Assembly: GCA_033442325.1 (NCBI GenBank)
Contig: JAWQFM010000014.1
Location: forward strand, 705,445-769,444
Direction: 5' to 3'
DNA length: 64,000 nucleotides
Source: Salpingoeca rosetta
Lineage: Eukaryota; Protista; Choanoflagellata
In this document: piece by piece, positions 49,752 through 64,000 of the stretch
Position numbering within the stretch: the first letter of the stretch is position 1
Layout of the letters: every line of letters begins with the position of its first letter
Translations under genes and position numbers: made by a program
The notes under the pieces: model-generated
What the model was told of the DNA's origin: nothing
Databases searched by the model: none
What the model saw: the letters and a program-made list of their open reading frames with translations, nothing else

Positions 49752-51054
49752 CACACACACACACGCCACAGCACTCGCGCCGACTTGATGCAGTGACTCG
49801 TGAATCATGCACTCCACCACCACAACAACAACAGCGTTCCACACCACAACAAGCACAACTGCAAGACACTGCACACACACGCACACACACGCCTACACGC
49901 ACCGCACCTTCCTGTCCGCTTCCCAAACTCACGTGATTGGGCGTGTCGAGAAAAGCACACAACAGTGAACAAGAAGGCAACAACAGCAGAGTGGCTGGGC
50001 AGCTGTCGGGGATGAAGCGGCTGCAACGAGAGAACACACGCACAAACACACGCACACACGCGCACACACTGGCAGGCGACTGAGAGACTGAAAGGAGGGA
50101 GGGCTGCTGGATATGGGCGCGAGTTGGGGTGGTGGGTTGGATGTTCGCGCGTTTGCAGTTTTGCAGCTCTTCTTTGTGTTGCTTGCTTGCTTGCTTGTGT
50201 GTTTGTGTGGTGCGATTTTCTGCTGTATTTTCAAGCAATTGCACACACCATACAACTCGCACACAAAGTCGTTTTGAGAATCGTGCGCATTAGTGCCCAC
50301 AAGCGTATCCACCAGCTTTCCTCCCAGCAAAGCCAGCTTGGGCTGCTTGCTGGCGTTTGCGCTGCCGCTTCTCCCACACACAACAACACAAACATACGAC
50401 GACCACCACCACACACCCCTTCTTCCCTCTCCCTCTTCAGCACGTCAGCGCTTCGTTTCAGGGCTGCTGCCGCTGCTGCTGTTCTTGGTGCTGTTCAACC
50501 AAGACAGGCAGAGAGAGCCGCAAGGAGAGAGTGCGCGCACACTCTTTCCCTTTGCTCCCTTGAGCGTGCGTGTGAAGGACACCGTGTGTGCGTGTGTCCT
50601 GCGCTGAAGCTCAAACACAAACGCTGAGACACAAAAGCAACAGAGAGGATACACGCAGTGAAGACGGTACGATGTGCAGCTACGCCACTGCTTATTGTTT
50701 GGATTTGGATCTGTCTTGCTTTGCTTGCGTGTGCACAAGCTGGAGTTTGACGTGAGCGCATGCGAGCACGAGCGCGGAGTTGGGGCGGGGGGCTGGCTTG
50801 TGCGCTGGTGCTTATGTCCACACGCACGTTTTGTTTGTCCAGATGCCTTGCTGGCGTTTGTTCGGACGCTCACATACGCACACGCATGTACACAAACATA
50901 CACCACGCAAACGCCACGCACAATACCCACAACTCACACACACACACACACGCACACACACGCACGCACGCACAACCCCCACAACACACACGCAATCCTA
51001 CACCAACACGCACACGCACACACCAACACACCGCCAACGTGACGCACGATACAG

Positions 51055-54000
51055 ATGATGGGGCTGCAAGGGAGGCCTGAGCCTCCCTCCTCAGCGGCAC
51101 GATGCACAGTGTGGTGGTGGCTGGGTGCCACCCTGCTCACCTCGCTAGTGCTGATGCCAGCAAGCGGTGCACACGGCACCATTGTTATCCAAGGCCCCGC
51201 CGTGCAGACACTGGAGGGCGGCTCCGCATACAGAGACGCTGCCCTGTGCAACCACGACCCCGTGAAGAAACCCTTCTGTGCCTACAAACAAGGCGGCCGA
51301 TCTGATGGCCAGGACATCACCATCACCGGCCTCCCGCTCCAGTGCAGCACAACCACCGGCGCGTGCACCGTCACCGCGCCAACGGCGCAGTGCTTCACAG
51401 ACGCAGACTGCCAAACCACGTCCCTGCTGGTCGATGGTGTTCCAGCCACAAACCCGGACGAGCCAGCCGCCATCGTCTACAACATGGGCCGCTACGTCAT
51501 CACCTTCAAGGTCAACGGTAACAGCGAATCCTGCACGTACGAGAACCCAGGCACCAAGGAGCCCGGGCAGCCCGACTGCACGCGCATCCTCTACGTCCGC
51601 GACAGAACCCCGCCGGTCATCACCCTGATCGGCGACAAGACCGTTGTCCTGCAAGGTGGCGAGGAGTTCTCCGACCCGGGCGCCACCGGCCATGACGTCG
51701 TTGACGGCGCCATGGACTACATTGCCGACCCGCCCTGCCCCGTGGAGCGGGACGGTGACGGCAACATTGTCAAGTTTATCGGCTCCCCCGGCCAAATCTG
51801 CCGCTTTGTCACCACCGCGGACCTTGTCATTGACAACAAGGAAATCAAGAACCAGACCATCTACTACATTGCCCTGGACACCACCCTCAACTACCGCCAG
51901 GTGGAGCGCACCATCGTGCTGGAAGACACCATCCCGCCCGTCATGACCCTGTGCGGGCCGCACGACGTGGTTGGCGACTCCTCGCACGAGGCCGGCCAGG
52001 AGTACATCGACGCCTGGTGCACCCCAAAGGACAACCCCTGCCTCATGCCAAAGGACCGCCAGCTCACCATGCAGGAGTGTGAGGCAAAGTCGCAGTGCAT
52101 GTGGATTGCCGGCGCATCGCTGGACGTGGACGGCTTCTGCCACCTCAAGACGAGCCCTTGCTTTGGCATCCGCGACGAGAACGACTGCAACGCAGACTCG
52201 GACTGCACCTGGTGCCCGCGCGGCGTCACCGCGTTTGACATTGTCGACGCCAACCCAACAGACGCCATCAAGGTCAACAACCCGGTTGACTCGCAGTCCC
52301 TCGGCATCTACACCATCACCTACACGCTCGCTGACGAGAACGGCAACGTGGCCACCCCGGTCACCCGCCGCGTGCGCGTGCGCGACACCACCGCGCCCGC
52401 CATCACCCTCCTCGGAGACAGCGAGGTGGAGGTGGAGGGCGCCACCTTCTACTTTGAGCGCTTCGCCACGGCCTCCGACTCCTTTGAAGGCGACATCACA
52501 AACCGCATCCTGCTCAAGGTGGACCGCCTGGGCAACCTCGACTGCACAAAGTCGCGCGGCTGCGGCGACCCCAACTTTGTGGACCCGTACGCCCCTGCCG
52601 GCACATCCTTCCTCCTCACATACTCCGTGGCAGACTCAAGCGGCAACTCAGACTCCATGACCAGCCGCGCCACGCGCGAGGTGACCATCATCGACACCAC
52701 CGCGCCCGTACTGCAGCTGCTGGGGCCAAACCCGCTCAACGTCGAAGGCGCCACCGTCTACACGGAGCCGGGGGCCACAGCCACGGACACGCTGGATGAC
52801 GACGACACGCTCTCGCAGTCGATCATCATTGGCGGCGACCGCGTCGACACCAACGCCCCGGCCTTCTCCTCCTTCAACATCTCCTACGATGTCAACGACG
52901 CAGCCGGCAACCCCGCGCGCTCGCTCTTCCGCGAGGTGGTGGTGGTCGACTCCACCCCGCCCGAAATCTCGCTCGTGGGCGACGCCAGCATCGTTGTGGA
53001 CGCCGCACGCGACTACACGGACAAGAACGTCACCGCGGAGGACTCGCTGGACGGGCCCTACCAGTTTCTGCCGCGCTTCGCCAGCCGCATCCGCAAAGTG
53101 GTGCGCAGGCTGGACGTCAGCTGCAGCGACACGGAGTACGAGACGGCGCCACAGTCGGCTCTTGTCGCTCGCTCCTGCGCCCCGCTCACCACGTGCACCG
53201 CCGGCCAGTTTGAGAGCCTTGCGCCCACGCCAACCTCCAACCGCCAGTGCCAGGGCACGCGCGCGCCGTGTGCACTTGGCCAGGACTACGAGATTCGCGC
53301 GCCCACGCCCACGTCCGACCGCGTGTGCGAGGACTGCAGCGGGGCTCGCCAGCAGCTGGCGCCACGCTCCCTCTACTCCATCATCAACCGCACAGACTGC
53401 TTTGACGTGAACCCGCCCAACCTCGTTGTCAACGTGACATGGCCTTCCATGCCCGAACAAGACGACCAACAGTCATCAGCCGCCAGCAACGACAACAGCG
53501 ACAACGGCACCACCACAACCACCATGAGCCCCAACACCACGCCACCGTTTGCCCACACCAAGGAGGTCAATGGCGTCGTGGTCACCACCATCTTCGTCAA
53601 CGATACAGTTGCTTGGTACTTTGACCCGTATCTGGTGGACATTGTTGCGCTGAACGGCTACTTCAACTCCAGCACGGTGTTCAACCGCTCAGACTACCTG
53701 CCACCAACACTGCCGCCACCGACCACGGCCGCCATGCAAAACCTCACCTCCACCTCCACCTCCACCACCACTGCTGCGACGACGACCACGAGCACCACAG
53801 CCGATGCCAACGCCACGACCACTGCCGCACCCGTGATCACCCCGCCGCCTCGCAACATCACCATCGAGCGCTTCGCCGTCGTGTTCACGGAGGCCGGCGA
53901 GTATGAGTACACGTCCACGCTCAACAGCTCCCTGCGCGGCGTTGTGCGGGTGATTGACCTGCCTGTCTTTGACAGCTGCGACCTGGAGGCCAGCCCGCTG

Positions 54001-57000
54001 TTCAACCCGAACGACACGGCCCGCGTCGTGCCGCTCAGGCAGGAGATTGCCGAGCTGGAGGCCTACGCGCACCTGTTTGCAGACGTGTCCCTTCCCTCCA
54101 TTGACGAGGACTACACGGGCCTGTGCCAGCGCATGAGCACCGTGTTCCTGCGCGACGTGCTGTTTGACTACGCCTTCCCGCCCGGCAGCGGCGCGCGTGC
54201 AGGGCAGCTGCAGCAGCTGCCGGCCAGCCTGCTGATTGAGGCCATTGACGAAGACCTGGGCAGGCTGGAGGCGCGCGCCGACGCAAACGCCGCCTGGCGC
54301 CGCGTTGTTGCCCCGCAGGTGCTCGCCGTGGGCGAGAACTCGCTCGTGCGCTTCATCCCATCGCCAAACCTGTACGGCCGCGCCACGTTCTCCTGGCGCA
54401 TGGTGGACGGCAGCCGCGAGGCCGACGACTTTCTCGGCACGGGCCAGGTGCAGATCCTGCCCGTCAACGACTCGCCCACCATCACGGGCAGCGCGGCCGT
54501 CAACTTTGTTGACGAAGACACGCCCGTGGACGACATCAACCCAACGCGTGTCGAGGACCTCATGGCCTCGGCCATGGACAACGACCGCATCACGGACGCA
54601 AACGTCACTATTGGTGCCGCCGTTGTGGCCGTCGACAACCGATTTGGCACCTGGCAGTTTGCCTGCCCGCCGCCAAACGTCAACGGCGGCAACAACAACC
54701 TGCAGTTCCAGGCGTTCCGTGGCGGTGTTGCGCCGGACACGACCGTGCACACGCTGCCTGCGCCCACGGTGGCCACGCTGCTCGGCCCAGAGTGCTTTTT
54801 GCGCTTTGTGCCGGAGACCAACTTCAACACGGAGTTTGACCTGACGGGCGAGCCGCGCCCGGCCTCGGACACGCCCACCATCCAGGTGCGCGCGTGGGAT
54901 CAGACGGGCGAGCGCATGTCCCAGCTACACGAGGGCGTGGACACCACGCAGGGCCCCGGCACACGCGGCAGCCCCTTCAGCGCCAACATCGCCACCGCAG
55001 GCGTCACCGTGTACCGCACAGATGACCCGCCCAACATCATCATCGCCCCTGGCGGCGCAGAGTACACGGCCACGTTTGCGCCGGGCTCCCTCACCCCCGT
55101 GGGCTTTGTGGACGACGACGCCCTTGCGCTGGAGACGCCCGATGGCCCGCTGCTGTCCGAAATTCGCATCCGCATCAGCAACGTGCAGGACGGCGGCGCC
55201 GAGGAGCTGCTGTACGAGACGACTGACACGGGCCTGGAGGTGACAGTTGAGCGCCCGCCCAACACCATCCTCGCCTTTATCCGCCTGGCCAACCGCGCGG
55301 AGTCGCGGCGTGACCAGCGCTTCTTCTTTGCCGTGCTCAGCTCCATGCGCTACATCCACCGCAACGTCAACGCCACCCGTGGCGAGCGCGTCGTCTCCGT
55401 GCAGGGCGTGCTTGGCCGCGTGCCGGGTGAGCCCGCCTTTGCCACCATCTCTGTCAACGCCGCCAACAACCCGCCCCTGCTAGACCTCAACCCGGCCCTG
55501 CGCGGCCACGACACCTTTGTTGTGTACGCATCCGACGGCACGCCGTCCACGCTCGCCCCTGCTGCGTCGCTCATTGACGAGGACAGCGACCCCATCACCG
55601 AGGTCACCATCACCATTGAGGGCGGCTTCCTCCCGCGCGAGGAGCTCCTGCTGCCCACAAACATGACCGGCGGGTACGTCGTCACCACCAGCGAAGAGGA
55701 CGGCAGCATCACCATCCGCCCAGCCCCGGGCGTGGACGCGGGCGCGCTTGATGCAGACAAGCTGGGAAGCCTGCTGCGCCAACTCGAGTACGTGTACCCG
55801 GCGCCACTGCCGCCGCCGCCGCCCGCCACCACGACGATGCCCGCTGCCAACGCCACCACAACCGTGCCCAACAACGCAACCGTGACCAGCACCGTTGCGG
55901 CGAACATGACGACGACATCAACCACCACCACGACCACAACAACAACAACGACCACAACCACAACCACAACCACGCCCATGCCCATGCTCATGACCACGCG
56001 GCGCGTTGTGCTCACCGTGTCGGACGGGCGCGACAGCACGTCCTCGCGCGTGCACATCTCGCCCAGCATGGCCGAGTCCCCGCCCTACCTCGACCTGAAC
56101 GGCGAGCGGCCGGGCGTGGACACCGCCGTCACCTATTCCGAGAGCCAGGGCCTGCTTGCCCTGGCAGACTCTCCATTTGTGCTTGTGCCCGGCGGCCAGC
56201 CGCTCGCGGAGGTGCGCGTGCGCATCGCCTCGAGCCCAGACTGCCTCAACGAGCGCCTGGTGCTGCCGGACGAGATTGCAAATTCGCACTCGTTCAACTT
56301 TGCCAACTTTGACGTGTCCACGGGCAAGCTCGTGTTCCGCGGCAGTGCCACAACGGGCACGTGGGCAAACGCCATCTCCTCGGTTGCCTTCGTCTCGGAC
56401 GCAGCCACCCTCTCTGGCACGTCGCGCACCGTCGTGTTTGAGATTGTGACGGATACGGGCGTGGTGTCCAACCCGGCGCGGGTGATCATCTCGCTCACGG
56501 CGTCCAACGACGCGCCCGTGCTCAACCCCTTTGGCGGCCCGCTCTCGCTGTCCGTGACGCAGGACGTCTCCGACTGGGACAACGCTGGCTGGCCCGTGCG
56601 TTCGCTGATTGACGAGGCGCAGCCGCTGTCGTACCGCTCGCGCGCCGAGCTGCTGTCCTGCGGCACCGCCGGATGCACGCACGCCGCGGCGCAGGGCCAG
56701 TGTGCCGCCAAGGGCCTGCAGCTGTGCACGCACGCACAGGTGTGGCAGGCGTGGCCCAACTTCCCCCACCCGAACGCAGACGGCACCGGTGGCAACGAGG
56801 GCGGCGACGACGTGGTCGCCTGGCTCTCCACGCCGCAGAACGGCACGCAGAACCTCCCCTCCCTCTCTGCGCGCAGCATGCAAGTGGGCAACGTGCTGCT
56901 GGAGGATGCCTCAGCGCTGGACTCTGAGCACGCGCAGGTGCTGCACCTGTACCCGAACGCCGACGAGCCCCGCTTTGCCTTTGCCCTCAAGCGCGACAGC

Positions 57001-60000
57001 CGGCTCGGCCTCCCCCTGTGGGCGGCCTGCTGCGAGCTGCCAGAGAGCGAAGCGCCGGGCACCGCCGGCCTTGAGGCCGTGGCCGTGTTCCGCACGGCGG
57101 GCGTGACGGGCCGCGTCACCTTCCGTCAGCGCGCCCCGGGCGCCACCACGCACGTGCACTTCAACCTGCGCGGCGTCGGGCGGCAGCTGCGCGAGTACAG
57201 CATCTACGCCGGCCAGACGGCCGCGCCCACCTCTGCGGACCGCTGCGACACGGTCGGCTCCATCTTTGACCCGCTCAACCTGGGCCGGTGCGAGCAAGGG
57301 GAGGACGACGCGGCATCCTGTGCCATTGGCGACCTGTCCCGCCGCGTGGGCCAGTTTGCTTCGGACCAGTCGTACTTTGACCGCTACGTCACGGACGCCA
57401 ACTTGCCGCTCTTTGGCGACAACAGCATCATCGGGCGCTCGTTTGCCGTGCTGCGCAACGGCCGCCCCAGCGTGTGCGTGCCCATTGTGGTGAGTCGGCC
57501 GTCGCGCCAGACATATGCCACGGTTGAGATGGACGACGAGGTGCGCGGGTCCGTGGCCATGCAGCAGTTTGCCTCGCAGGACGGCACCCTCACCCAGACG
57601 CTGGTGACCACCAACCTGCGCCTGGTCAACCCGCCCTCGCTCGCGCCGCAGATTGTGGACTGGAGCCTGGTGTCCAGTGCGGACGGCACGTGCGCGGCCG
57701 CCACGCCGCTGTTTGATGTTCCGCTCCGCGTGCGCCAGCCCATGTTCACCTCCACCGCCCAGGTGTGGGCGCCCACCACCAGCGCGTGGGTGCAGCCGCT
57801 CGAGGCGCAGGCAAACCAGGGCAACGCCTCCCTCCCCGTGGCGTGGTCCACACTCGCCCTCGACCTTGAGCAAGACTCGCTGTGCCTGGATGCCATGGCC
57901 CAGCTCAACCCGCTCGTGCTGGCAGGCAGCGACGGCGACGCGGGGAGCGCCATGCCACGCCTGTGCGTGTACGTGGACGCGGACGCCAGCGCTTCAGCGT
58001 CAACGAGCGCTGGCACGTGCGATGCCGTGTGGGGCCAAGCAGGAGCGCGCCTGCGTGCTGCGTGGTGCCAGCCACCGACGTGCACGGCGGATGGGTGGTG
58101 CAGTGTGCGGGACGCATGCGTGTCGGCGTCGACTGCGTTTGGCATTGCCACACCGGGTGCTGGTACGTCCGGGAGCGCAGCTGAGGAGGCCAGCGACGCA
58201 GCCAAGGTGGCGGCGTTTATGTCTGCCGCCGTTGCTCTGCACCCGGGCACCGCCGCCGCCACAACGGCACACGAGCGCACCAGCCTGTACACGGCGCGCC
58301 GCACCATTGCCAACACCAGCACGCTGTGTGCTGGGTTCGTGCCTGGGGCGGAAGCGTGCCCCGCCAACGCGGATGCGTGCGAGGCCGGCGACTGGACGGC
58401 CCGCTACGGGCGCCTCACCCTGCAGCCCATCAACACGCGCTTCATGTCCGCGCGCAACCTGCCGTTGCTGTCGAGCAACGACGTGTCCTCTGTGCTGCCG
58501 CCCCCCGCCTTTGCCTCCACAACGCCGTCCAAGGCCTCGCTGCGCGTGCAGCGGCCAGACGGCACGTACTCGTGCGCGCCCGTGAAGGAGCAGGTGAAGC
58601 CGCGCGAGGTGATTGCCCGCGTCGACATCAACGGCATTCAGGGCTTTGTCACCTTCTATCAGGCGTCCCCAGACGCGGCCACGCAGGTGAAGGTGGAGCT
58701 GCGCGGCACGGGCCTGGCCCAGGACAACAGCCTCATCGGCGCAAAGATGACCATCACCAGCAACGCCGTGAACCTGCAGGGCCTGTCCATGTCGGAGGTG
58801 TGCAGCGATCTCGGCGATTTGTTCCACCCGGACAACACCACCCTCACTGGCACGTGCAGCGCAGGCAACCTGGCCTCCTGCAGCGTGGGCGACCTGGCTG
58901 GGAAGCATGGCGCGTTGCCCAACCAGCCGCCCTACGAACAATACTTTGAGGACAACGACCTGCCCCTGTTTGGCAAGCGCAGTATTGTGGGTCGCTCCAT
59001 TCGCCTGATGCAAGGCTCCACGCTGCTTGCGTGTGCGCCCATCCTGTACGTGGACCCCGTGCGCGTTGCACGTGCCACGCTGCACTCGCCCGTGCACGGG
59101 TACGTGACGGCGTTTCAGCTGCGCGACGAGGCCGACAAGACGCTGGGTGATGCCAGCGGCACCCACGCTGCAGAGACCATCTTCATCGTGGACGTGGCGC
59201 GCTCCGATGTCAACGCGACGCAGGGCGCCCTGGACGTCGACTGGGCCGTGCGCGAGTACGACAACGCGTGCACGTGCCAGCGGCTTGGCCCCGCCCTTGC
59301 GCTGACCACGACCGGTGAGGCCGTGGGCGACCTGTCTTCGGAGGTGGGCGGCGTGCGCATCCCAGGCAGCGGCCAGGCCAGCGCCCGCCAGGTGTTTGCC
59401 TCCACGCGCCTGTCGCTGTCCATGCTCTTGAACCAGTCGGTGTACTTCTCCAACGACGCGTGCGCGGTGTTCCGCGAGGTGCTGCCTGTTGAGCTGGTGG
59501 CCTCGTTTGACCGCGAAGATGTGCACGGCCACGTCACGCTGCGCCAGGACCACATGCTGGCGCTGACGCAGGTGACGGTGACGCTGGCTGGGCTGGAGGA
59601 CCGCGGCAACGGCATTCGCGTGGAGGACCGGCGCCTGCTGCAGACACTTGACGACGAGGGCACCCCGCAGCTCGACTGCAACAGCGGCTCCACCATCTTT
59701 GATCCCCTGAAAATTGGCCGCCTGTGCGACAACCGCCTGTTTGCCTCCTCATCAGACGTGTGCGCGCCCGGTGACCTGAGCGGCCGGCACGGCGGCGTGG
59801 ACCGCCTGCCATCTGCCCGCAACGTCTTTGACGACTACTACCTGAACCTGTACGGCCCCAGCTCGCTGGCGTCGCGCGGGCTGGTCATCACGGGCTCCAC
59901 TGTGCTGCAGCAGCTGCGCAACCGCCCCTGGATCTGCGCCAACCTCGACGCAACGGAGCCCGCCGCCGCAACGCAGGCCGCTGCCGTCTTCTCCCCGGCG

Positions 60001-63000
60001 CAGCCAGAGCAGGCGCGCCTGCACGCCGCACACCAGCGGCCCGGCGACGTCGCGGACGGCATTGACGGGCAGGGCGACGGCCGCGGCATTCTGTCTGGCT
60101 GGCTGCACTTTTCCAAGCCCACGACCGCCGCCACCGCCGTAGACGACGACGACAGCGCCAGCCCGCCCACGCTCGTGTCCTCGTACCTGCAGCTGAGCGG
60201 CAGCGCGTGGAGCGTGGTTGACTGGTACGTGAGTGCCTCGGAGACGTGCGACGATGCCATTGCCGCGGCTGGCGGCAGCACGCGCGAGGACGTGTTCAAC
60301 CCGCACGGCGTGGCAACCACAAACACCTCTGGGTACGATGACGACTGCGGCACAGGCCGCAACCAGCTGCGGTGCGCAGCGGGCGACCTTGCCAACAAGC
60401 TTGGCACGGACGGCCTCGCTGCGTCGTCCTCACCATCCTTTGGTCGCGCTGACGTGAGCACGCAGCTGACGGGCGCGGCCACCATCATCGGGCGGCCGCT
60501 TGTGGTTGTGGCGCAGCACGGGACGACCCAGCAGAAGGAGGCGCTGTGCACCGTGGTGCGGTCGTACGGCGGCCCCAAGGTGAGCGACATTGACACGCCC
60601 CGCGAGCGGCTGGGCATTGCCGTTGTGGCGACGACCAGCGACCACGGCACGTGGCAGCTCTACCGCAACGAGGCGCAGGGGTGGGTGGATCTGCCGGAGG
60701 TGGCCTTCACCAACGCCCTGCACCTGCGTGCGTCGGACACGAACCGGCTGCGCTTCCGCCCCGAGACGCACTTTAGCGGCGACGAGGCGTGCGGCGTGTG
60801 CCCGACGCCGCGCCGCAAGAGCTGCGTGCCCTGCGCGCTCAACAGGACGGTGGGCAGCCTGACCTTCTACGGGTGGGACGGCAGCAACGTGGTGGCGGAC
60901 GGGGTGCGCTTCTCGCTCGCGCTGGCCGGTTCGTCGAGCTCCTACAGCAACCAGTCCAGCACGGTGCTGGTGCAGGTGCAGGACGCCAAGGTGAACGAGA
61001 CGGCGCCGCACGGCACGTCCTACGAGGTGCTGTTTGATGTGCAGGACAACGTGGGCAACCAGGCTGAGACGGTGACGCGCATGATCCGCGTGGAGGACAG
61101 CACGGACCCCGTCATCACGCTTCGCGGCGACGCCATGCTGAAGCACGAGGCTGCCACGCCATATGTTGACGACGGCGCGACGGCCTTTGATGCCCACGAC
61201 CTTTGGGTGAGCAACAACGTGTTTGTGGAAGGCATTGACGGTGACGTGCCGGCGTACCCGACGCCGCCCGCGGCCATCTCCGTGCTGTCATGCGACCGGG
61301 AGAACGACCCCCGCCTGGCCCTGCCCACGTACCAGGACGAGTACGGCCCGCTGTACACGTGCTCGCTGCCGCAGGACATGGCGCAGGAGCCGTTCTTCTG
61401 CGTGGAGCGCAGCGAGCCTGCGGCCACCGACCCGCTTCTCCAGCGCAACGGCGGCGGCATTCGCCTGCAGGGCAGTGGCCGCGTCAACGGCTACACCATG
61501 CCGTGCACGCTGACGGGCAGCCGCCTCACGTGCTTCTCCAGCGACACGGCCGCCCAGAACCTGCAGTACCCAGGCACGGCCACGGAGCGGCACCTGGCCT
61601 GCGCTGCGCGCGTGCGCACGCCGCTGTGCCAGTACCACGACTACATCCTTGCCACGCGCCACCGCTATCCCGTGAGCGGGGAGGTGGACGTGTACGCGCC
61701 GGACGGCAGCACGTTCACGCTCAACTACACGGTGGCGGATGCTGCAGGCAACTCGCACCTGGTGCAGCGGCAGGTGGAGATTGAGGACACGCGGCCGCCC
61801 GTGCTGCGCCCCTTCAACCAGGGCAACACGCTCGAGTTTGTCCGAGAGAACGGCGTGGCGGCGGAGCCGTACAACCCGCACGACTTTGCGTGCGCGTCGA
61901 CCATCGCCAGCCGCTTCACGGAGGCCAACGCCAGCATGATCCACTGCGTGTCTGCGCTTGACACGCTGGAGGGGGACCTGAGCTGCGACGTGACGACGTC
62001 CGTGTACGTGTTTGGCCCCGGCAGCGGCATGCAGGAGCAGCTGACACGCTTCCGCCGCGCAGCAGAGGTGCACAGCAGCGAGGAGCTGTTTGTGCAGGTG
62101 AGCGCGTCCTGCGTCAACTGGAACTCGTTTATCGAGCTGCCCTTCAACACGTCATCGACGCCGACCGACCCCATCTGCTTTGATGCGATGGGCACGCTGG
62201 ACCTGGTCAACGCAACAGCGCCGCTCAACACATCGTACCTCATCACGTACACGGTGCAGGACCACTCGCGCCAGCAGCACCGCGTGAGCACGCAGCGGCT
62301 GCTGACGCTGGTGGACGAGCGGCCGCCGCAGGTGCGCATCCTGAGCGACCCCGTGCTGTTTGTGGACTACCTGACCAACTTCACGGACGCCATGGCCAAG
62401 CAAGGGCTGGCCGTGTTTGACGAGCACGATGGCGAGATCACCACGGCCATCCAGGTGGAGTCTAATGTGAACACGGCCGTGCCGGGCAACTACACCGTCT
62501 CGTACACAGCACAGGACCTGTCTGGCAACCGCGGCGTGACGGCGACGCGCATTGTGGTGGTGCGGCCGCCGGCGGAGGTGCAGCTCATGCGCAACCAGAG
62601 CACCGTCTCGTACGGCCTCACGCTCCGGTACATGCGCCCCTCCGTGTTCAACACGTTTGACGGCCACACCACGTTCCGCTGGGCGCTGTGGTACTCTGTG
62701 CGCAACTTCAGCGACGCCTTCTCCGACCTGCGGCGCAGCGACATTGTGCGCCTGGACGCGCGCGGTGTTTCCACGCCCGCTCCCCGCGCCCGCCGCGACG
62801 TGACGGCAGAGCCCGAGAACACGGCCGTGTCGTTCTCGCTGGCCACCCCGTGCGACCGCGCGGAGGAGCTGGCGCAGGTGCTTGGCCTCGTGGTGCGACA
62901 GGGGGTGCTGCTGTCCAACCTCAGCGTGGCGGCGCCGCTCACGTACGACAACGTGTTCCCGAGCGTGACGGGCCAGCCTGCGCTGGGCCTGGGCATGTGC

Positions 63001-64000
63001 CCCGTGGTGACAACAACCACCACGACGACGACAACCACGACGACGACCACGGACAACTCGACGACGGTGGACCCGACGCTCAACAGCTCGTCGGGCGGCT
63101 CCAACGACGCGGTCATCATCGTGGCTATTGTCATCCCCGTGCTGCTGCTCATCATCGCGCTGGTTGTGTTTGTGTACCGCGCGACAAAGCCGAAGAACCG
63201 CCTGGACGCGCTGCTGCAGTACCAGGAGGCGCACGAGCTGTCCCACTACGGTGGCGTGCCTGGCGGCCCCGCCGGCGACAAGGGCCAGACGATGGTGCGT
63301 GTCGGCAAGTACAACGTGGAGGTTGACACCAGCCCGCAGCTGCAGAACGAGGACGTGTATGCGTTCCACACGCCCAAGAACATGACGCCCGGGCAGGCCA
63401 AGGCACAGGCGACGGCGAAGAAGGCGCCGCCGCCGCCGCCAGAGGACATTTACGAGGACGTGGACCACAAGAAGTCCACGCTGCGGCGGCCAGGGGATGC
63501 GCTGCAGCCCAGCACTGTGTTTATCGAGAGCGCGCCGGAGACGTACGAGGCGTTTGACTCGAGCAACCCGGCATTCTCCAGCGACGCTTCGCTGCGGCCC
63601 ACAGGCTTCCAGCACACGGATGACGACATCTACGATGGCGTGGACGGCGGCAACATGGGCTTCAGCTCGCACGACAAGTCGTCCAGGACGGGCGACCTGG
63701 CCAAGGTCACGGAGGAACTGTACGAGGTGCAAGGAAAGGGGGCGACGCTGCGCAAGAAGCCGCCTGCCCCACCGACGGTACCGACTCCCGTGGCACCAGC
63801 GCCCCTGGCACCGACAAGTTTCCAGCCCACGGAGGACGATATCTACGATGGCGTGGATGTTGCTGCTCCAGCTGGCTTCAGCTCGCATGACAAGTCTTCT
63901 CGCACGGGTGATTTGGCCAAGGTGACGGAAGAGCTGTATGAGGTGCAGGGCAAAGCGTCCACACTTCGCAAGAAGCCACCGGCACCTGCGCCAGTACCCG
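51055..64000 (+). CDS. Giant single-pass (type I) cell-surface receptor/adhesion protein, >4315 aa, intronless in this window, 3' end beyond the window
   Basis: Frame +1 open from ATG 51055 to the window end (translated by eye; absent from the ORF track because there is no stop). Signal peptide (VWWWLGATLLTSLVLMPASGA); ~9 DUF5011/HYR-like Ig repeats (D[TS]xPPVITLxG...Y.V.D.AGN...R.V.V); TNFR-like Cys repeats (PTPTSDRVC); a cupredoxin-like domain; bacterial cadherin-like repeats (VNDSP, NNPPLLDLN, SNDAPVL); a Link-like module; six SOD-fold repeats; a SEA-like domain with RARR; a Thr stalk; TM 63109-63177 (AVIIVAIVIPVLLLIIALVVFVY); a Tyr/Pro-rich tail. Strong GC3 codon bias and no dinucleotide microsatellites. 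Confidence 0.93.
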   Translation, partial: MMGLQGRPEPPSSAARCTVWWWLGATLLTSLVLMPASGAHGTIVIQGPAVQTLEGGSAYRDAALCNHDPVKKPFCAYKQGGRSDGQDITITGLPLQCSTTTGACTVTAPTAQCFTDADCQTTSLLVDGVPATNPDEPAAIVYNMGRYVITFKVNGNSESCTYENPGTKEPGQPDCTRILYVRDRTPPVITLIGDKTVVLQGGEEFSDPGATGHDVVDGAMDYIADPPCPVERDGDGNIVKFIGSPGQICRFVTTADLVIDNKEIKNQTIYYIALDTTLNYRQVERTIVLEDTIPPVMTLCGPHDVVGDSSHEAGQEYIDAWCTPKDNPCLMPKDRQLTMQECEAKSQCMWIAGASLDVDGFCHLKTSPCFGIRDENDCNADSDCTWCPRGVTAFDIVDANPTDAIKVNNPVDSQSLGIYTITYTLADENGNVATPVTRRVRVRDTTAPAITLLGDSEVEVEGATFYFERFATASDSFEGDITNRILLKVDRLGNLDCTKSRGCGDPNFVDPYAPAGTSFLLTYSVADSSGNSDSMTSRATREVTIIDTTAPVLQLLGPNPLNVEGATVYTEPGATATDTLDDDDTLSQSIIIGGDRVDTNAPAFSSFNISYDVNDAAGNPARSLFREVVVVDSTPPEISLVGDASIVVDAARDYTDKNVTAEDSLDGPYQFLPRFASRIRKVVRRLDVSCSDTEYETAPQSALVARSCAPLTTCTAGQFESLAPTPTSNRQCQGTRAPCALGQDYEIRAPTPTSDRVCEDCSGARQQLAPRSLYSIINRTDCFDVNPPNLVVNVTWPSMPEQDDQQSSAASNDNSDNGTTTTTMSPNTTPPFAHTKEVNGVVVTTIFVNDTVAWYFDPYLVDIVALNGYFNSSTVFNRSDYLPPTLPPPTTAAMQNLTSTSTSTTTAATTTTSTTADANATTTAAPVITPPPRNITIERFAVVFTEAGEYEYTSTLNSSLRGVVRVIDLPVFDSCDLEASPLFNPNDTARVVPLRQEIAELEAYAHLFADVSLPSIDEDYTGLCQRMSTVFLRDVLFDYAFPPGSGARAGQLQQLPASLLIEAIDEDLGRLEARADANAAWRRVVAPQVLAVGENSLVRFIPSPNLYGRATFSWRMVDGSREADDFLGTGQVQILPVNDSPTITGSAAVNFVDEDTPVDDINPTRVEDLMASAMDNDRITDANVTIGAAVVAVDNRFGTWQFACPPPNVNGGNNNLQFQAFRGGVAPDTTVHTLPAPTVATLLGPECFLRFVPETNFNTEFDLTGEPRPASDTPTIQVRAWDQTGERMSQLHEGVDTTQGPGTRGSPFSANIATAGVTVYRTDDPPNIIIAPGGAEYTATFAPGSLTPVGFVDDDALALETPDGPLLSEIRIRISNVQDGGAEELLYETTDTGLEVTVERPPNTILAFIRLANRAESRRDQRFFFAVLSSMRYIHRNVNATRGERVVSVQGVLGRVPGEPAFATISVNAANNPPLLDLNPALRGHDTFVVYASDGTPSTLAPAASLIDEDSDPITEVTITIEGGFLPREELLLPTNMTGGYVVTTSEEDGSITIRPAPGVDAGALDADKLGSLLRQLEYVYPAPLPPPPPATTTMPAANATTTVPNNATVTSTVAANMTTTSTTTTTTTTTTTTTTTTTTPMPMLMTTRRVVLTVSDGRDSTSSRVHISPSMAESPPYLDLNGERPGVDTAVTYSESQGLLALADSPFVLVPGGQPLAEVRVRIASSPDCLNERLVLPDEIANSHSFNFANFDVSTGKLVFRGSATTGTWANAISSVAFVSDAATLSGTSRTVVFEIVTDTGVVSNPARVIISLTASNDAPVLNPFGGPLSLSVTQDVSDWDNAGWPVRSLIDEAQPLSYRSRAELLSCGTAGCTHAAAQGQCAAKGLQLCTHAQVWQAWPNFPHPNADGTGGNEGGDDVVAWLSTPQNGTQNLPSLSARSMQVGNVLLEDASALDSEHAQVLHLYPNADEPRFAFALKRDSRLGLPLWAACCELPESEAPGTAGLEAVAVFRTAGVTGRVTFRQRAPGATTHVHFNLRGVGRQLREYSIYAGQTAAPTSADRCDTVGSIFDPLNLGRCEQGEDDAASCAIGDLSRRVGQFASDQSYFDRYVTDANLPLFGDNSIIGRSFAVLRNGRPSVCVPIVVSRPSRQTYATVEMDDEVRGSVAMQQFASQDGTLTQTLVTTNLRLVNPPSLAPQIVDWSLVSSADGTCAAATPLFDVPLRVRQPMFTSTAQVWAPTTSAWVQPLEAQANQGNASLPVAWSTLALDLEQDSLCLDAMAQLNPLVLAGSDGDAGSAMPRLCVYVDADASASASTSAGTCDAVWGQAGARLRAAWCQPPTCTADGWCSVRDACVSASTAFGIATPGAGTSGSAAEEASDAAKVAAFMSAAVALHPGTAAATTAHERTSLYTARRTIANTSTLCAGFVPGAEACPANADACEAGDWTARYGRLTLQPINTRFMSARNLPLLSSNDVSSVLPPPAFASTTPSKASLRVQRPDGTYSCAPVKEQVKPREVIARVDINGIQGFVTFYQASPDAATQVKVELRGTGLAQDNSLIGAKMTITSNAVNLQGLSMSEVCSDLGDLFHPDNTTLTGTCSAGNLASCSVGDLAGKHGALPNQPPYEQYFEDNDLPLFGKRSIVGRSIRLMQGSTLLACAPILYVDPVRVARATLHSPVHGYVTAFQLRDEADKTLGDASGTHAAETIFIVDVARSDVNATQGALDVDWAVREYDNACTCQRLGPALALTTTGEAVGDLSSEVGGVRIPGSGQASARQVFASTRLSLSMLLNQSVYFSNDACAVFREVLPVELVASFDREDVHGHVTLRQDHMLALTQVTVTLAGLEDRGNGIRVEDRRLLQTLDDEGTPQLDCNSGSTIFDPLKIGRLCDNRLFASSSDVCAPGDLSGRHGGVDRLPSARNVFDDYYLNLYGPSSLASRGLVITGSTVLQQLRNRPWICANLDATEPAAATQAAAVFSPAQPEQARLHAAHQRPGDVADGIDGQGDGRGILSGWLHFSKPTTAATAVDDDDSASPPTLVSSYLQLSGSAWSVVDWYVSASETCDDAIAAAGGSTREDVFNPHGVATTNTSGYDDDCGTGRNQLRCAAGDLANKLGTDGLAASSSPSFGRADVSTQLTGAATIIGRPLVVVAQHGTTQQKEALCTVVRSYGGPKVSDIDTPRERLGIAVVATTSDHGTWQLYRNEAQGWVDLPEVAFTNALHLRASDTNRLRFRPETHFSGDEACGVCPTPRRKSCVPCALNRTVGSLTFYGWDGSNVVADGVRFSLALAGSSSSYSNQSSTVLVQVQDAKVNETAPHGTSYEVLFDVQDNVGNQAETVTRMIRVEDSTDPVITLRGDAMLKHEAATPYVDDGATAFDAHDLWVSNNVFVEGIDGDVPAYPTPPAAISVLSCDRENDPRLALPTYQDEYGPLYTCSLPQDMAQEPFFCVERSEPAATDPLLQRNGGGIRLQGSGRVNGYTMPCTLTGSRLTCFSSDTAAQNLQYPGTATERHLACAARVRTPLCQYHDYILATRHRYPVSGEVDVYAPDGSTFTLNYTVADAAGNSHLVQRQVEIEDTRPPVLRPFNQGNTLEFVRENGVAAEPYNPHDFACASTIASRFTEANASMIHCVSALDTLEGDLSCDVTTSVYVFGPGSGMQEQLTRFRRAAEVHSSEELFVQVSASCVNWNSFIELPFNTSSTPTDPICFDAMGTLDLVNATAPLNTSYLITYTVQDHSRQQHRVSTQRLLTLVDERPPQVRILSDPVLFVDYLTNFTDAMAKQGLAVFDEHDGEITTAIQVESNVNTAVPGNYTVSYTAQDLSGNRGVTATRIVVVRPPAEVQLMRNQSTVSYGLTLRYMRPSVFNTFDGHTTFRWALWYSVRNFSDAFSDLRRSDIVRLDARGVSTPAPRARRDVTAEPENTAVSFSLATPCDRAEELAQVLGLVVRQGVLLSNLSVAAPLTYDNVFPSVTGQPALGLGMCPVVTTTTTTTTTTTTTTDNSTTVDPTLNSSSGGSNDAVIIVAIVIPVLLLIIALVVFVYRATKPKNRLDALLQYQEAHELSHYGGVPGGPAGDKGQTMVRVGKYNVEVDTSPQLQNEDVYAFHTPKNMTPGQAKAQATAKKAPPPPPEDIYEDVDHKKSTLRRPGDALQPSTVFIESAPETYEAFDSSNPAFSSDASLRPTGFQHTDDDIYDGVDGGNMGFSSHDKSSRTGDLAKVTEELYEVQGKGATLRKKPPAPPTVPTPVAPAPLAPTSFQPTEDDIYDGVDVAAPAGFSSHDKSSRTGDLAKVTEELYEVQGKASTLRKKPPAPAPVP
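57073..60561 (+). repeat. Six tandem Cu/Zn-SOD-fold (CSRP-type) protein repeats within the giant ORF
   Basis: Repeats at ~57073-57489, 57508-58590, 58606-59049, 59062-59478, 59491-59949, 59974-60561 share G.V.F.Q...T.V, C...F[DN]P, C..GDL..[KR]HG and LPLFG..SI[IV]GRS..C..I. Confidence 0.82.
63601..64000 (+). repeat. Cytoplasmic tandem ~71-72-aa repeat (DDIYDGV...FSSHDKSSRTGDLAKVTEELYEVQGK..TLRKKPPAP), at least 2 copies
   Basis: IYDG at 63628 and 63841; the Tyr of ELYEV at 63721 and 63937. Confidence 0.95.

What the first reader, a model, noticed from the sequence alone, without database searches (positions are those of the whole stretch)
57073..60561. Six copper-dead SOD-fold repeats (pseudo-CSRP) repurposed in a membrane receptor
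Seen in sequence: the repeats largely keep the SOD/CSRP scaffold (GVTGRVTFRQ, disulfide Cys, CxxGDL[SA]G[KR]HG, DxxLPLFGxxSI[IV]GRS, RPWICANL). They alternate in A/B form: odd repeats have T.V...L.G, even repeats have VDW.V-like strands. The Cu-ligand positions are substituted in every repeat where I can align them: the HxH strand reads YSIYA / MTITS / IRVED / WYVSA; G.H[FY]NP reads GSIFDP / GDLFHP / TIFDP / DVFNP; the final VIH reads AVLR / RLMQ / VITG / VVVA. Established knowledge: animal Cu-only SOD repeat proteins (CSRP) carry tandem repeats of this type with the His ligands. Inference: this is a catalytically dead, expanded CSRP array used as a binding or structural module, and may show the CSRP array in a unicellular relative of animals.
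Basis: partly seen in the sequence, partly recalled or inferred. Interest (0 to 1): 0.8.

Follow-up and report, generated by a model that had tools for sequence, protein, structure and literature searches.

The report
Copper-less SOD repeats inside giant receptor
A choanoflagellate gene for a giant single-pass membrane receptor carries, in the middle of its outer part, six tandem copies of the superoxide-dismutase fold that have all lost their copper-binding histidines, a pre-animal example of an enzyme array turned into a non-catalytic building block; copper-less versions and membrane-anchored versions of this array were already known in animals.

Summary
Window 57073-60561 (+) is aa 2007-3169 of an uninterrupted ORF of more than 4315 aa. 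The ORF has a signal peptide, one TM helix and a Tyr-motif tail, and it is transcribed without introns. The stretch holds six SOD-fold domains. R1, R3 and R5 are clear by sequence. R2, R4 and R6 need profile and structure evidence, and R2 is split by a ~220-aa insertion. None of the six has the four Cu-ligand histidines. The same holds in collinear orthologues from Barroeca monosierra and Salpingoeca infusionum. The nearest other relatives are CSRP/SOD4 arrays of animals and Capsaspora.

A repeat tree splits odd (A) from even (B) repeats in all taxa, so the alternation is family-wide and not local.

The novelty is limited. Cu-less six-domain CSRPs are published for arthropods and tardigrades. 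SOD4/CSRP with signal peptide and TM is published for choanoflagellates and filastereans. Monosiga brevicollis and S. kvevrii have Cu-intact arrays.

What is new is the Cu-less array embedded about 2000 aa deep in a multidomain receptor with a phosphotyrosine-type tail. That placement is conserved in three choanoflagellates. First-reader notes of this scan report other SOD-repeat membrane proteins elsewhere in this genome; I did not check them. The function, scaffold or binding, is inferred.

The parts
51055..64000 (+). Single-exon ORF of a type I membrane protein, more than 4315 aa. The C-terminus lies beyond the window.
   Evidence: No stop codon in frame +1. Stranded RNA-seq reads cover 56300-62200 without a splice joint. 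Collinear with Barroeca monosierra P0001 (48% identity over aa 27-4209) and S. infusionum P0002 (38%).
51055..51177 (+). Probable signal peptide (aa 1-41).
   Evidence: A hydrophobic stretch follows the first Met (read directly). No predictor was run.
57073..57492 (+). R1, A-type SOD-fold domain (aa 2007-2146). Cu positions are S, Y, I, L.
   Evidence: PF00080 33.7 bits. SOD1-type PDB hits at E 3e-7. hhalign 99.9%.
57493..58596 (+). R2, B-type SOD-fold domain split by an insertion (aa 2147-2514). Cu positions are S, V, L, Q.
   Evidence: hhalign finds two collinear halves at 95.9% and 76.6%. In the AF2 model the barrel halves have pLDDT 77-93. VIA alignment gives Z 13.4 to Candida SOD5 and Z 10-12.7 to Cu/Zn SODs; the next unrelated fold scores Z 4.5.
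57703..58362 (+). Insertion of about 220 aa, Cys-rich, inside R2. It sits between the strand-4 / FDP region and the CxxGD loop.
   Evidence: pLDDT is 30-45 in the AF2 model. The insertion is present in Barroeca and shorter in S. infusionum. There is no significant Pfam match.
58597..59049 (+). R3, A-type SOD-fold domain (aa 2515-2665). Cu positions are T, T, L, M.
   Evidence: Candida SOD5 at E 4e-5. hhalign 100%. AF2 pLDDT above 90, VIA Z 19.2 to SOD5 with 147 residues aligned.
59050..59481 (+). R4, B-type SOD-fold domain (aa 2666-2809). Cu positions are A, R, A, S.
   Evidence: hhalign 97.7%, E 1.9e-12. The AF2 model of the R3-R4 pair has pLDDT 91.4 and pTM 0.90. The two-domain model superposes on a chordate CSRP cluster over 276 of 295 residues, TM 0.85.
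59482..59946 (+). R5, A-type SOD-fold domain (aa 2810-2964). Cu positions are R, E, I, T.
   Evidence: blastp against R1 gives 8e-14. hhalign 99.7%.
59947..60561 (+). R6, B-type SOD-fold domain with a lengthened first hairpin (aa 2965-3169). Cu positions are S, V, V, V.
   Evidence: hhalign 98.5%, E 2e-15. Iterated profile gives 6.9e-12.
63109..63177 (+). The only strong transmembrane helix (aa 4019-4041), followed by basic residues.
   Evidence: Kyte-Doolittle scan, peak 3.65.
63178..64000 (+). Cytoplasmic tail with tandem Tyr/Pro motifs (acidic-IYDGVD, EELYEVQGK, KKPPAP). It runs off the window.
   Evidence: Read directly from the sequence. The S. infusionum orthologue has a C-terminal SH2 match of 21 bits, exactly at the Pfam cut-off.

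Best explanation
The stretch encodes a six-domain array of the CSRP/SOD4 type (Cu-only SOD repeat protein). It is arranged as three A-B domain pairs, and every domain has lost the four copper-ligand histidines. The array has been built into the middle of the ectodomain of a giant single-pass receptor of a choanoflagellate.

Shown here:
- the fold;
- the family relationship;
- the absence of the ligand histidines;
- retention of the barrel, of the canonical disulfide cysteines and of the GDL-G-K/R-HG and LPLFG-SI-GRS scaffold motifs;
- conservation in three species;
- transcription;
- an extracellular position upstream of the single TM helix.

Inferred: the array does not dismutate superoxide. 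It works as a rigid, disulfide-locked scaffold whose loops, including the large R2 insertion, offer binding surfaces for an extracellular ligand. Occupancy would be relayed through the single helix to a tail that is tyrosine-phosphorylated and read by SH2 or SH3 proteins.
For: Family relationship. Apart from two choanoflagellate orthologues, the best of 348 library hits are multi-repeat proteins with 4-11 matched stretches. They include Capsaspora CAOG_08503/KJE90024.1 and mollusc and brachiopod CSRPs.

Fold.
- Each repeat matches a profile of 358 Cu-intact CSRP repeats at 96-100% probability.
- The R3-R4 model has pLDDT 91.4 and pTM 0.90.
- It matches Candida SOD5 best, at Z 19.2.
- It matches a chordate CSRP model as a two-domain unit, TM 0.85 over 276 residues.
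- R2 alone matches SOD5 at Z 13.4.

Cu site.
- No repeat has the HHHH pattern in S. rosetta, Barroeca or S. infusionum.
- The same alignment shows HHHH in 11 of 13 Capsaspora repeats and in R3-R6 of animal CSRPs.
- Each repeat holds only 2-5 His in total, and these are not conserved in the orthologues.

Constraint. The array is about as conserved as the whole protein: 44% against 48% with Barroeca, and 35% against 38% with S. infusionum.

Expression. Stranded RNA-seq reads cover the array continuously.

Precedent. Cu-less six-domain CSRPs that are expressed and predicted to fold normally are described in arthropods and tardigrades. Oyster dominin is a Cu-less extracellular SOD used in bacterial recognition (PMC13017621, section 9).
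Against: - No activity or metal-binding measurement exists.
- A non-canonical metal site cannot be excluded from sequence alone. The 12 Cys of R2 are one candidate.
- Nothing here identifies a ligand, so 'binding surface' and 'inert spacer' cannot be told apart.
- The AF2 models used alignments that contain CSRP repeats, so they are not independent of the sequence-based assignment.
- R4 was never searched as a lone domain.
- The receptor reading of the tail rests on motifs and on a borderline SH2 match in one orthologue.
Confidence: 0.8

Rival explanations
1. The array is only a stiff spacer. It sets the height or spacing of the flanking Ig-like/HYR-like modules above the membrane and has no ligand of its own.
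For: Linkers are short (about 3-10 aa) and the A-B pair has a fixed predicted orientation, pTM 0.90. The residues that are conserved are mostly fold-scaffold motifs. The array is flanked on both sides by other extracellular modules.
Against: Each positional repeat has been kept as a distinct lineage in three species, with 95-99 support. A conserved ~220-aa insertion decorates R2. A plain spacer would tolerate repeat loss or homogenisation.
Confidence: 0.3
2. The dead domains dock a copper-loaded CSRP/SOD partner by like-with-like domain pairing, as CCS domain II docks SOD1. This would tether or sense an active extracellular SOD.
For: Choanoflagellates also encode Cu-intact, TM-anchored arrays: M. 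brevicollis A9V3S8 with 4 HHHH repeats and S. kvevrii with 4. An unchecked note of this scan (s1-434606) reports an intact/degenerate array elsewhere in this genome. CCS domain II is the precedent (PMC13017621, section 5).
Against: There is no evidence of inter-molecular pairing. Predicted CSRP domain contacts are intramolecular and unlike the SOD1 dimer interface (PMC13017621, section 8).
Confidence: 0.1
3. The repeats still bind a metal or carry out redox chemistry through non-canonical ligands.
For: The D113-equivalent Asp is kept in all six repeats, and R2 keeps the E110-equivalent Glu. R2 has 12 Cys.
Against: All four His positions are replaced by mostly aliphatic or polar non-ligand residues. 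The replacements differ between orthologues, as expected without constraint on a site. The E110 equivalent in R2 is not conserved in Barroeca or S. infusionum.
Confidence: 0.05
4. It is not a real product: a pseudogene, an assembly chimera or an untranslated region.
For: No protein at 50% identity or more to this stretch is in the 15-billion-protein library, so the gene seems absent from public protein sets.
Against: The frame is open for 12.9 kb. Strand-specific RNA coverage is continuous. Independent assemblies contain the stretch in one piece. Full-length collinear orthologues exist in two other species.
Confidence: 0.02

Closest known systems
Animal CSRP / SOD4 (Cu-only SOD repeat proteins; PMC13017621, PMC10416458, PMC12217663)
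   Same: Six tandem Cu-only-type SOD barrels with short linkers. Canonical disulfide. No Zn-site His and no long electrostatic loop. Extracellular. Odd/even (A/B) repeat classes are shared. The two-domain geometry matches a chordate CSRP model.
   Different: Animal CSRPs are stand-alone proteins of about 1000 aa that are GPI-anchored, TM-anchored or secreted, and usually have four intact Cu sites. Here no site is intact. The array sits at aa 2007-3169 of a protein of more than 4315 aa, between other modules. R2 carries a ~220-aa insertion.
Cu-less six-domain CSRPs of arthropods and tardigrades (PMC13017621, section 9). Seen here in Strigamia T1J9S4 and in ticks.
   Same: All six domains lack the Cu site yet keep the fold and cysteines.
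   Different: Those are ordinary stand-alone CSRPs. Their loss of the site is independent of the choanoflagellate one, because the repeats do not group with them in the tree.
Capsaspora owczarzaki CSRP (CAOG_08503 / KJE90024.1)
   Same: A SOD-repeat ectodomain in a unicellular holozoan, on a single-pass membrane protein with a signalling-type cytoplasmic part (SH3, Pfam 7e-11).
   Different: It has 13 repeats, 11 of them with HHHH. The array makes up nearly the whole ectodomain.
Fungal Cu-only SOD5 (PDB 4n3t)
   Same: It is the best structural match for R3 (Z 19.2, 29% identity) and R2 (Z 13.4). Both share the short loop VII and the GDL-AGKHG loop.
   Different: SOD5 is a single-domain active enzyme with four His ligands and the E110/D113 pair.
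CCS domain II and oyster dominin (SOD-fold proteins without catalytic Cu)
   Same: Both are precedents for a Cu-less SOD fold reused for protein docking or for bacterial recognition (PMC13017621).
   Different: They derive from Cu/Zn-SOD-type domains, are single domains, and have a different context. No direct relationship was tested here.

Membership tests
Pfam PF00080 Sod_Cu superfamily (SOD beta-barrel) | Significant match to the family profile or fold | tested here: met
   R1 scores 33.7 bits against a cut-off of 28.9, and the whole protein 53.4 bits. PDB SOD hits. VIA Z 19.2 for R3 and 13.4 for R2.
CSRP / SOD4 | [quoted passage not shown] | tested here: met
   There are six domains. Linkers are about 3-10 aa by the hhalign and profile boundaries. 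The exceptions lie inside domains: the R2 insertion and the R6 hairpin.
CSRP / SOD4 | Conserved intramolecular disulfide (C57/C146 equivalents) in each domain | tested here: met
   Both Cys align in all six repeats. Five of the six also keep the second, loop Cys pair. Bond formation itself was not tested.
CSRP / SOD4 | Cu-only type: no Zn-site histidines and no extended electrostatic loop VII | tested here: met
   In the R1/SOD1 alignment the H71 and H80 positions are non-His. Only about 6-10 residues separate the H120-equivalent from the last Cys. The best structural match is SOD5, not the Cu/Zn SODs.
CSRP / SOD4 | Repeats fall within the family's repeat classes in a tree | tested here: met
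   Odd repeats fall with A-class and even repeats with B-class repeats of animals, Capsaspora and other choanoflagellates. The A|B branch has UFBoot 96 and SH-aLRT 95.
CSRP / SOD4 | At least some domains with an intact four-His Cu site and the E110/D113 pair | tested here: not met
   Zero of six repeats are intact. D113 is kept in all six, E110 only in R2. The literature already accepts Cu-less members (PMC13017621).
CSRP / SOD4 | Stand-alone extracellular protein: signal peptide, array, then GPI anchor or C-terminal TM | tested here: not met
   The array starts about 2000 aa after the signal peptide and ends about 850 aa before the TM helix, with Ig-like/HYR-like modules on both sides.
Active Cu-only SOD enzyme (SOD5 type) | Superoxide dismutase activity and Cu binding | not testable with these tools
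   This needs recombinant protein, ICP-MS or EPR, and an activity assay.

The most novel reading that the evidence does not exclude
The copper-less array is the ligand-sensing part of a pre-metazoan phosphotyrosine receptor. A former extracellular antioxidant enzyme array would have been converted into a recognition module, for bacterial or prey surfaces as with oyster dominin, or for a Cu-loaded CSRP partner. It would be wired to SH2/SH3 signalling before animals arose. In addition, the whole CSRP family would be built from an ancestral two-domain A-B unit.
Probability: 0.15. Interest if true: 0.75.

Novelty: new variant of a known kind. Interest (0 to 1): 0.5.

Why it matters
CSRP/SOD4 proteins are a recently recognised family of extracellular SOD arrays, and their non-enzymatic members have no known function. 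This locus offers a genetically tractable unicellular organism in which a fully copper-less array is fixed inside a receptor with an obvious signalling tail. The question 'what do Cu-less SOD arrays do?' could therefore be approached by deletion, by ligand pull-down and by phosphotyrosine read-outs.

The locus also shows that domain co-option of the array, and its A-B pair architecture, predate animals. Finally, the gene appears to be missing from public protein sets, which matters for inventories of choanoflagellate receptors.

Tried and rejected
- The word-indexed protein search with the array region of the full protein found nothing. The search with R3 alone also found nothing.
- Self-blast of the whole array returned only the identity hit. 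Pairwise blast of the pieces was needed.
- Single-sequence Pfam scans miss R4, R5 and R6.
- hmmalign mis-registers R2, R4 and R6 at some ligand columns. One example is a spurious His at the fourth position of R6. I took the hhalign registers instead. Either register gives no four-His site.
- MAFFT spread the middle of R2 arbitrarily across the insertion, so the R2 model is informative only for the two barrel halves.
- I could not root the repeat tree with fungal SOD5 or Cu/Zn SOD sequences, because no tool delivered them as usable records. The direction of the A/B split is therefore unknown.
- Positional orthology between choanoflagellate R1-R6 and animal R1-R6 is unresolved. Deep nodes are poorly supported and the dead repeats sit on long branches.
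- The pseudogene or artefact reading is rejected.
- I did not verify the species name independently.


Full report
**What is at the locus**

Frame +1 of the + strand is open from an ATG at 51055 to the end of the window, 4315 codons with no stop. The product has these parts:
- A hydrophobic N-terminal signal-like segment.
- Several Ig-like/HYR-like modules (PF16403, 161 bits) on both sides of the finding.
- One strong transmembrane helix at aa 4019-4041, followed by basic residues.
- A cytoplasmic tail with two copies of a Tyr/Pro-rich unit. The tail runs off the window.

Raw stranded RNA-seq reads from two runs cover 56300-62200 continuously. They show no splice joints and have the polarity expected for a + strand transcript. 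The finding's coordinates, 57073-60561, correspond to aa 2007-3169.

**Checking the observation**

The quoted motifs are present. Pairwise blast shows that R1, R3 and R5 are full-length homologues of each other (E 1e-23 to 6e-13). R2, R4 and R6 match mainly the C-terminal halves of the odd repeats (E 1e-4 to 6e-4).

Matches to known families:
- Pfam PF00080 passes its cut-off on R1 (33.7 bits) and is sub-threshold on R3 (19.2 bits).
- R1 hits PDB Cu/Zn SODs at E 3e-7 to 5e-6. R3 hits Candida albicans Cu-only SOD5 at E 4e-5.

The even repeats needed more sensitive tests. I built three-species alignments of each repeat and compared them with a profile of 358 CSRP repeats that have intact Cu sites. 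The probabilities were 99.9 (R1), 95.9 and 76.6 (the two collinear halves of R2), 100 (R3), 97.7 (R4), 99.7 (R5) and 98.5% (R6).

Structure predictions agree:
- The R3-R4 pair model has mean pLDDT 91.4 and pTM 0.90.
- R3 matches SOD5 at Z 19.2 (147 residues aligned) and Cu/Zn SODs at Z about 17.
- The two-domain model superposes on a chordate PF00080 multi-repeat cluster over 276 of 295 residues (TM 0.85, rmsd 2.3).
- The R2 model is confident only in its two barrel halves (pLDDT 77-93). These match SOD5 at Z 13.4 and Cu/Zn SODs at Z 10-12.7, then drop to Z 4.5 for unrelated folds.
- About 220 residues between the two halves of R2 are Cys-rich and of low confidence.

Six SOD-fold repeats are therefore real.

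**Copper site**

In the SOD1 and SOD5 alignments the four ligand positions of R1 read S, Y, I, L and two of those of R3 read L and M. I also aligned 744 repeats from 157 proteins. There the four family-wide His columns are occupied as follows:
- R1: S, Y, I, L
- R2: S, V, L, Q
- R3: T, T, L, M
- R4: A, R, A, S
- R5: R, E, I, T
- R6: S, V, V, V

The same alignment recovers HHHH in 11 of 13 Capsaspora repeats and in R3-R6 of mollusc, brachiopod and chiton CSRPs. The columns are therefore correctly identified.

Each repeat holds only 2-5 His in total, and these are not conserved in the orthologues. The structural features are kept:
- Both canonical disulfide cysteines in all six repeats.
- A second loop cysteine pair in five of the six.
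- The Asp of the GDL loop in all six.
- The LPLFG..SI.GRS segment in the odd repeats.

The E110-equivalent Glu survives only in R2 of this species. The Zn-site His positions and the long electrostatic loop are absent, as in Cu-only SODs.

**Relatives**

An exhaustive HMMER search of 1.84 billion representatives gave 348 hits.

The top two hits are full-length orthologues. One is a 4041-aa protein of Barroeca monosierra, 44% identical over the whole array. The other is a 4247-aa protein of Salpingoeca infusionum. Both are collinear with the window protein over essentially its whole length, at 48% and 38% identity. Both have the six repeats at the same place, and neither has a single intact Cu site. 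The loss therefore predates the divergence of these three choanoflagellates. The array is roughly as conserved as the rest of the ectodomain.

The next hits are CSRP-type arrays:
- Capsaspora CAOG_08503/KJE90024.1
- Lingula
- Tegillarca
- Liolophura
- Mizuhopecten

No representative is 50% identical or more to the window's own stretch. This suggests the gene is missing from public protein sets. That agrees with an unchecked note of this scan (s1-442065).

**A/B alternation**

I built a maximum-likelihood tree of 54 single repeats from three choanoflagellate receptors, Capsaspora and four animals. One branch separates all odd repeats from all even repeats. In Capsaspora the split follows an alternating pattern. 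Support is UFBoot 96 and SH-aLRT 95, and the split appears in 99% of bootstrap trees.

The split survives when repeats of Monosiga brevicollis, S. kvevrii, Choanoeca flexa and Bigelowiella natans are added (SH-aLRT 89). I then labelled all 744 repeats with A- and B-class HMMs. The commonest patterns were ABABAB (38 proteins) and ABAB (30 proteins).

Neither the 2026 review (PMC13017621) nor Tan et al. 2025 (PMC12217663) mentions it. Each positional repeat, R1 to R6, is monophyletic across the three receptor orthologues, with support 95-99. Deeper relations are unresolved, including one-to-one orthology with animal R1-R6.

**What is already known**

- The review PMC13017621 describes CSRPs as 4-12 tandem Cu-only SOD domains with short linkers. 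[quoted passage not shown]
- The same review states that arthropod and tardigrade CSRPs lack any Cu site in all six domains, yet are expressed and predicted to fold normally. My data reproduce this for Strigamia and ticks.
- Lyubetsky et al. 2023 (PMC10416458) report the SOD4 family in choanoflagellates and filastereans. They list a signal peptide and a C-terminal TM as common features.
- I find Cu-intact, TM-anchored arrays in M. brevicollis (A9V3S8, 4 HHHH repeats) and S. kvevrii.
- Capsaspora KJE90024.1 has a TM-like segment and a cytoplasmic SH3 domain.
- A hydrophobicity scan found 23 of 156 hit proteins with a TM segment plus a tail after the array.

Only the three choanoflagellate orthologues have the array buried about 1900-2000 residues into a multidomain ectodomain. 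No paper in the searchable library combines 'choanoflagellate' and 'Cu-only'.

**Mechanism**

Shown:
- The array is extracellular.
- It is transcribed and conserved.
- It is SOD-folded and carries the canonical disulfide cysteines.
- It is histidine-less at the metal site.

Inferred:
- The array is not an enzyme.
- The three A-B pairs form a stiff scaffold. The pair has high pTM and the linkers are short.
- Lineage-specific decorations of the scaffold provide binding surfaces. These are the R2 insertion and the R6 hairpin.
- The single TM helix couples occupancy to a Tyr-motif tail.

The S. infusionum orthologue even ends in an SH2 match, at exactly the Pfam cut-off.

I put 0.8 on 'Cu-less, non-catalytic CSRP-derived ectodomain module'. 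Within that reading, binding against pure spacer is open. Docking of a Cu-loaded CSRP partner and residual non-canonical metal chemistry are minor rivals. An artefact is essentially excluded.

**Verdict**

The novelty is moderate: this is a new architectural variant of a known family, not a new kind of system.

First-reader notes of this scan report other SOD-repeat membrane proteins on other pieces of the same genome (s1-443145, s1-443382, s1-434606, s1-440528, s1-436196). I could not check them. If they are correct, this locus belongs to a larger choanoflagellate expansion of SOD-fold ectodomains.

Noticed in passing
P0151 (Capsaspora KJE90024.1, 2456 aa): My profile finds 13 SOD repeats, 11 of them with HHHH. 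There is a 100-aa gap at aa 357-457 that could hide a 14th repeat. A TM-like segment and a cytoplasmic SH3 domain (Pfam 7e-11) follow the array. The 2026 review gives 12 repeats with 9 intact, and describes CSRPs as GPI-anchored or secreted.
   Followed up: partly
P0019 (Bigelowiella natans), P0146 (Norrisiella sphaerica): Chlorarachniophyte (Rhizaria) proteins carry ABABAB / ABAB SOD-repeat arrays with a TM segment. The literature read here places the family only in animals and their close relatives. This could be transfer, contamination or an older origin.
   Followed up: partly
P0002 (S. infusionum orthologue), aa 4152-4213: There is a C-terminal SH2 match at 21.0 bits, exactly the Pfam cut-off. 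The S. rosetta C-terminus lies beyond the window, so it is unknown whether it has one too.
   Followed up: no
window 57703-58362: A Cys-rich insertion of about 220 aa sits inside repeat R2. It is conserved in Barroeca and shorter in S. infusionum. The fold prediction has low confidence and there is no family match. This may be the 'domain inside a domain' noted by another reader (s1-442031).
   Followed up: partly
window 63340-64000: The cytoplasmic tail holds two near-identical units: acidic-IYDGVD, SSHDKSSRTGDLAKVTEELYEVQGK, then KKPPAP. They look like tandem phosphotyrosine / SH3-binding motifs.
   Followed up: no
window 51055-64000: No protein at 50% identity or more to the array is present in the 15-billion-protein library, although RNA-seq covers it. 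The gene seems to be missing from public gene models.
   Followed up: partly
window 56700-57070 and 60562-60900: The sequence just before the array (a Cys-rich, lectin-like stretch after an NDAPV-type segment) and just after it (DIDTP..LGIAV..GTWQ..LRFRP) look like two halves of one cadherin-like/adhesin repeat. If so, the array would be an insertion into another domain. This was not tested.
   Followed up: no
window 8505-9345 and 25640-25739: Runs of N (assembly gaps). The first one lowers the apparent GC of the 8-10 kb bin.
   Followed up: no
window ~50900-51040: A long CA/AC microsatellite lies just upstream of the start codon. It reads as HTHTHT in frame.
   Followed up: no
P0139 (Choanoeca flexa, 1648 aa): This is another composite choanoflagellate protein. 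It has three SOD repeats, one of them with HHHH, at the N-terminus, followed by about 1100 aa of other sequence and a TM segment.
   Followed up: no
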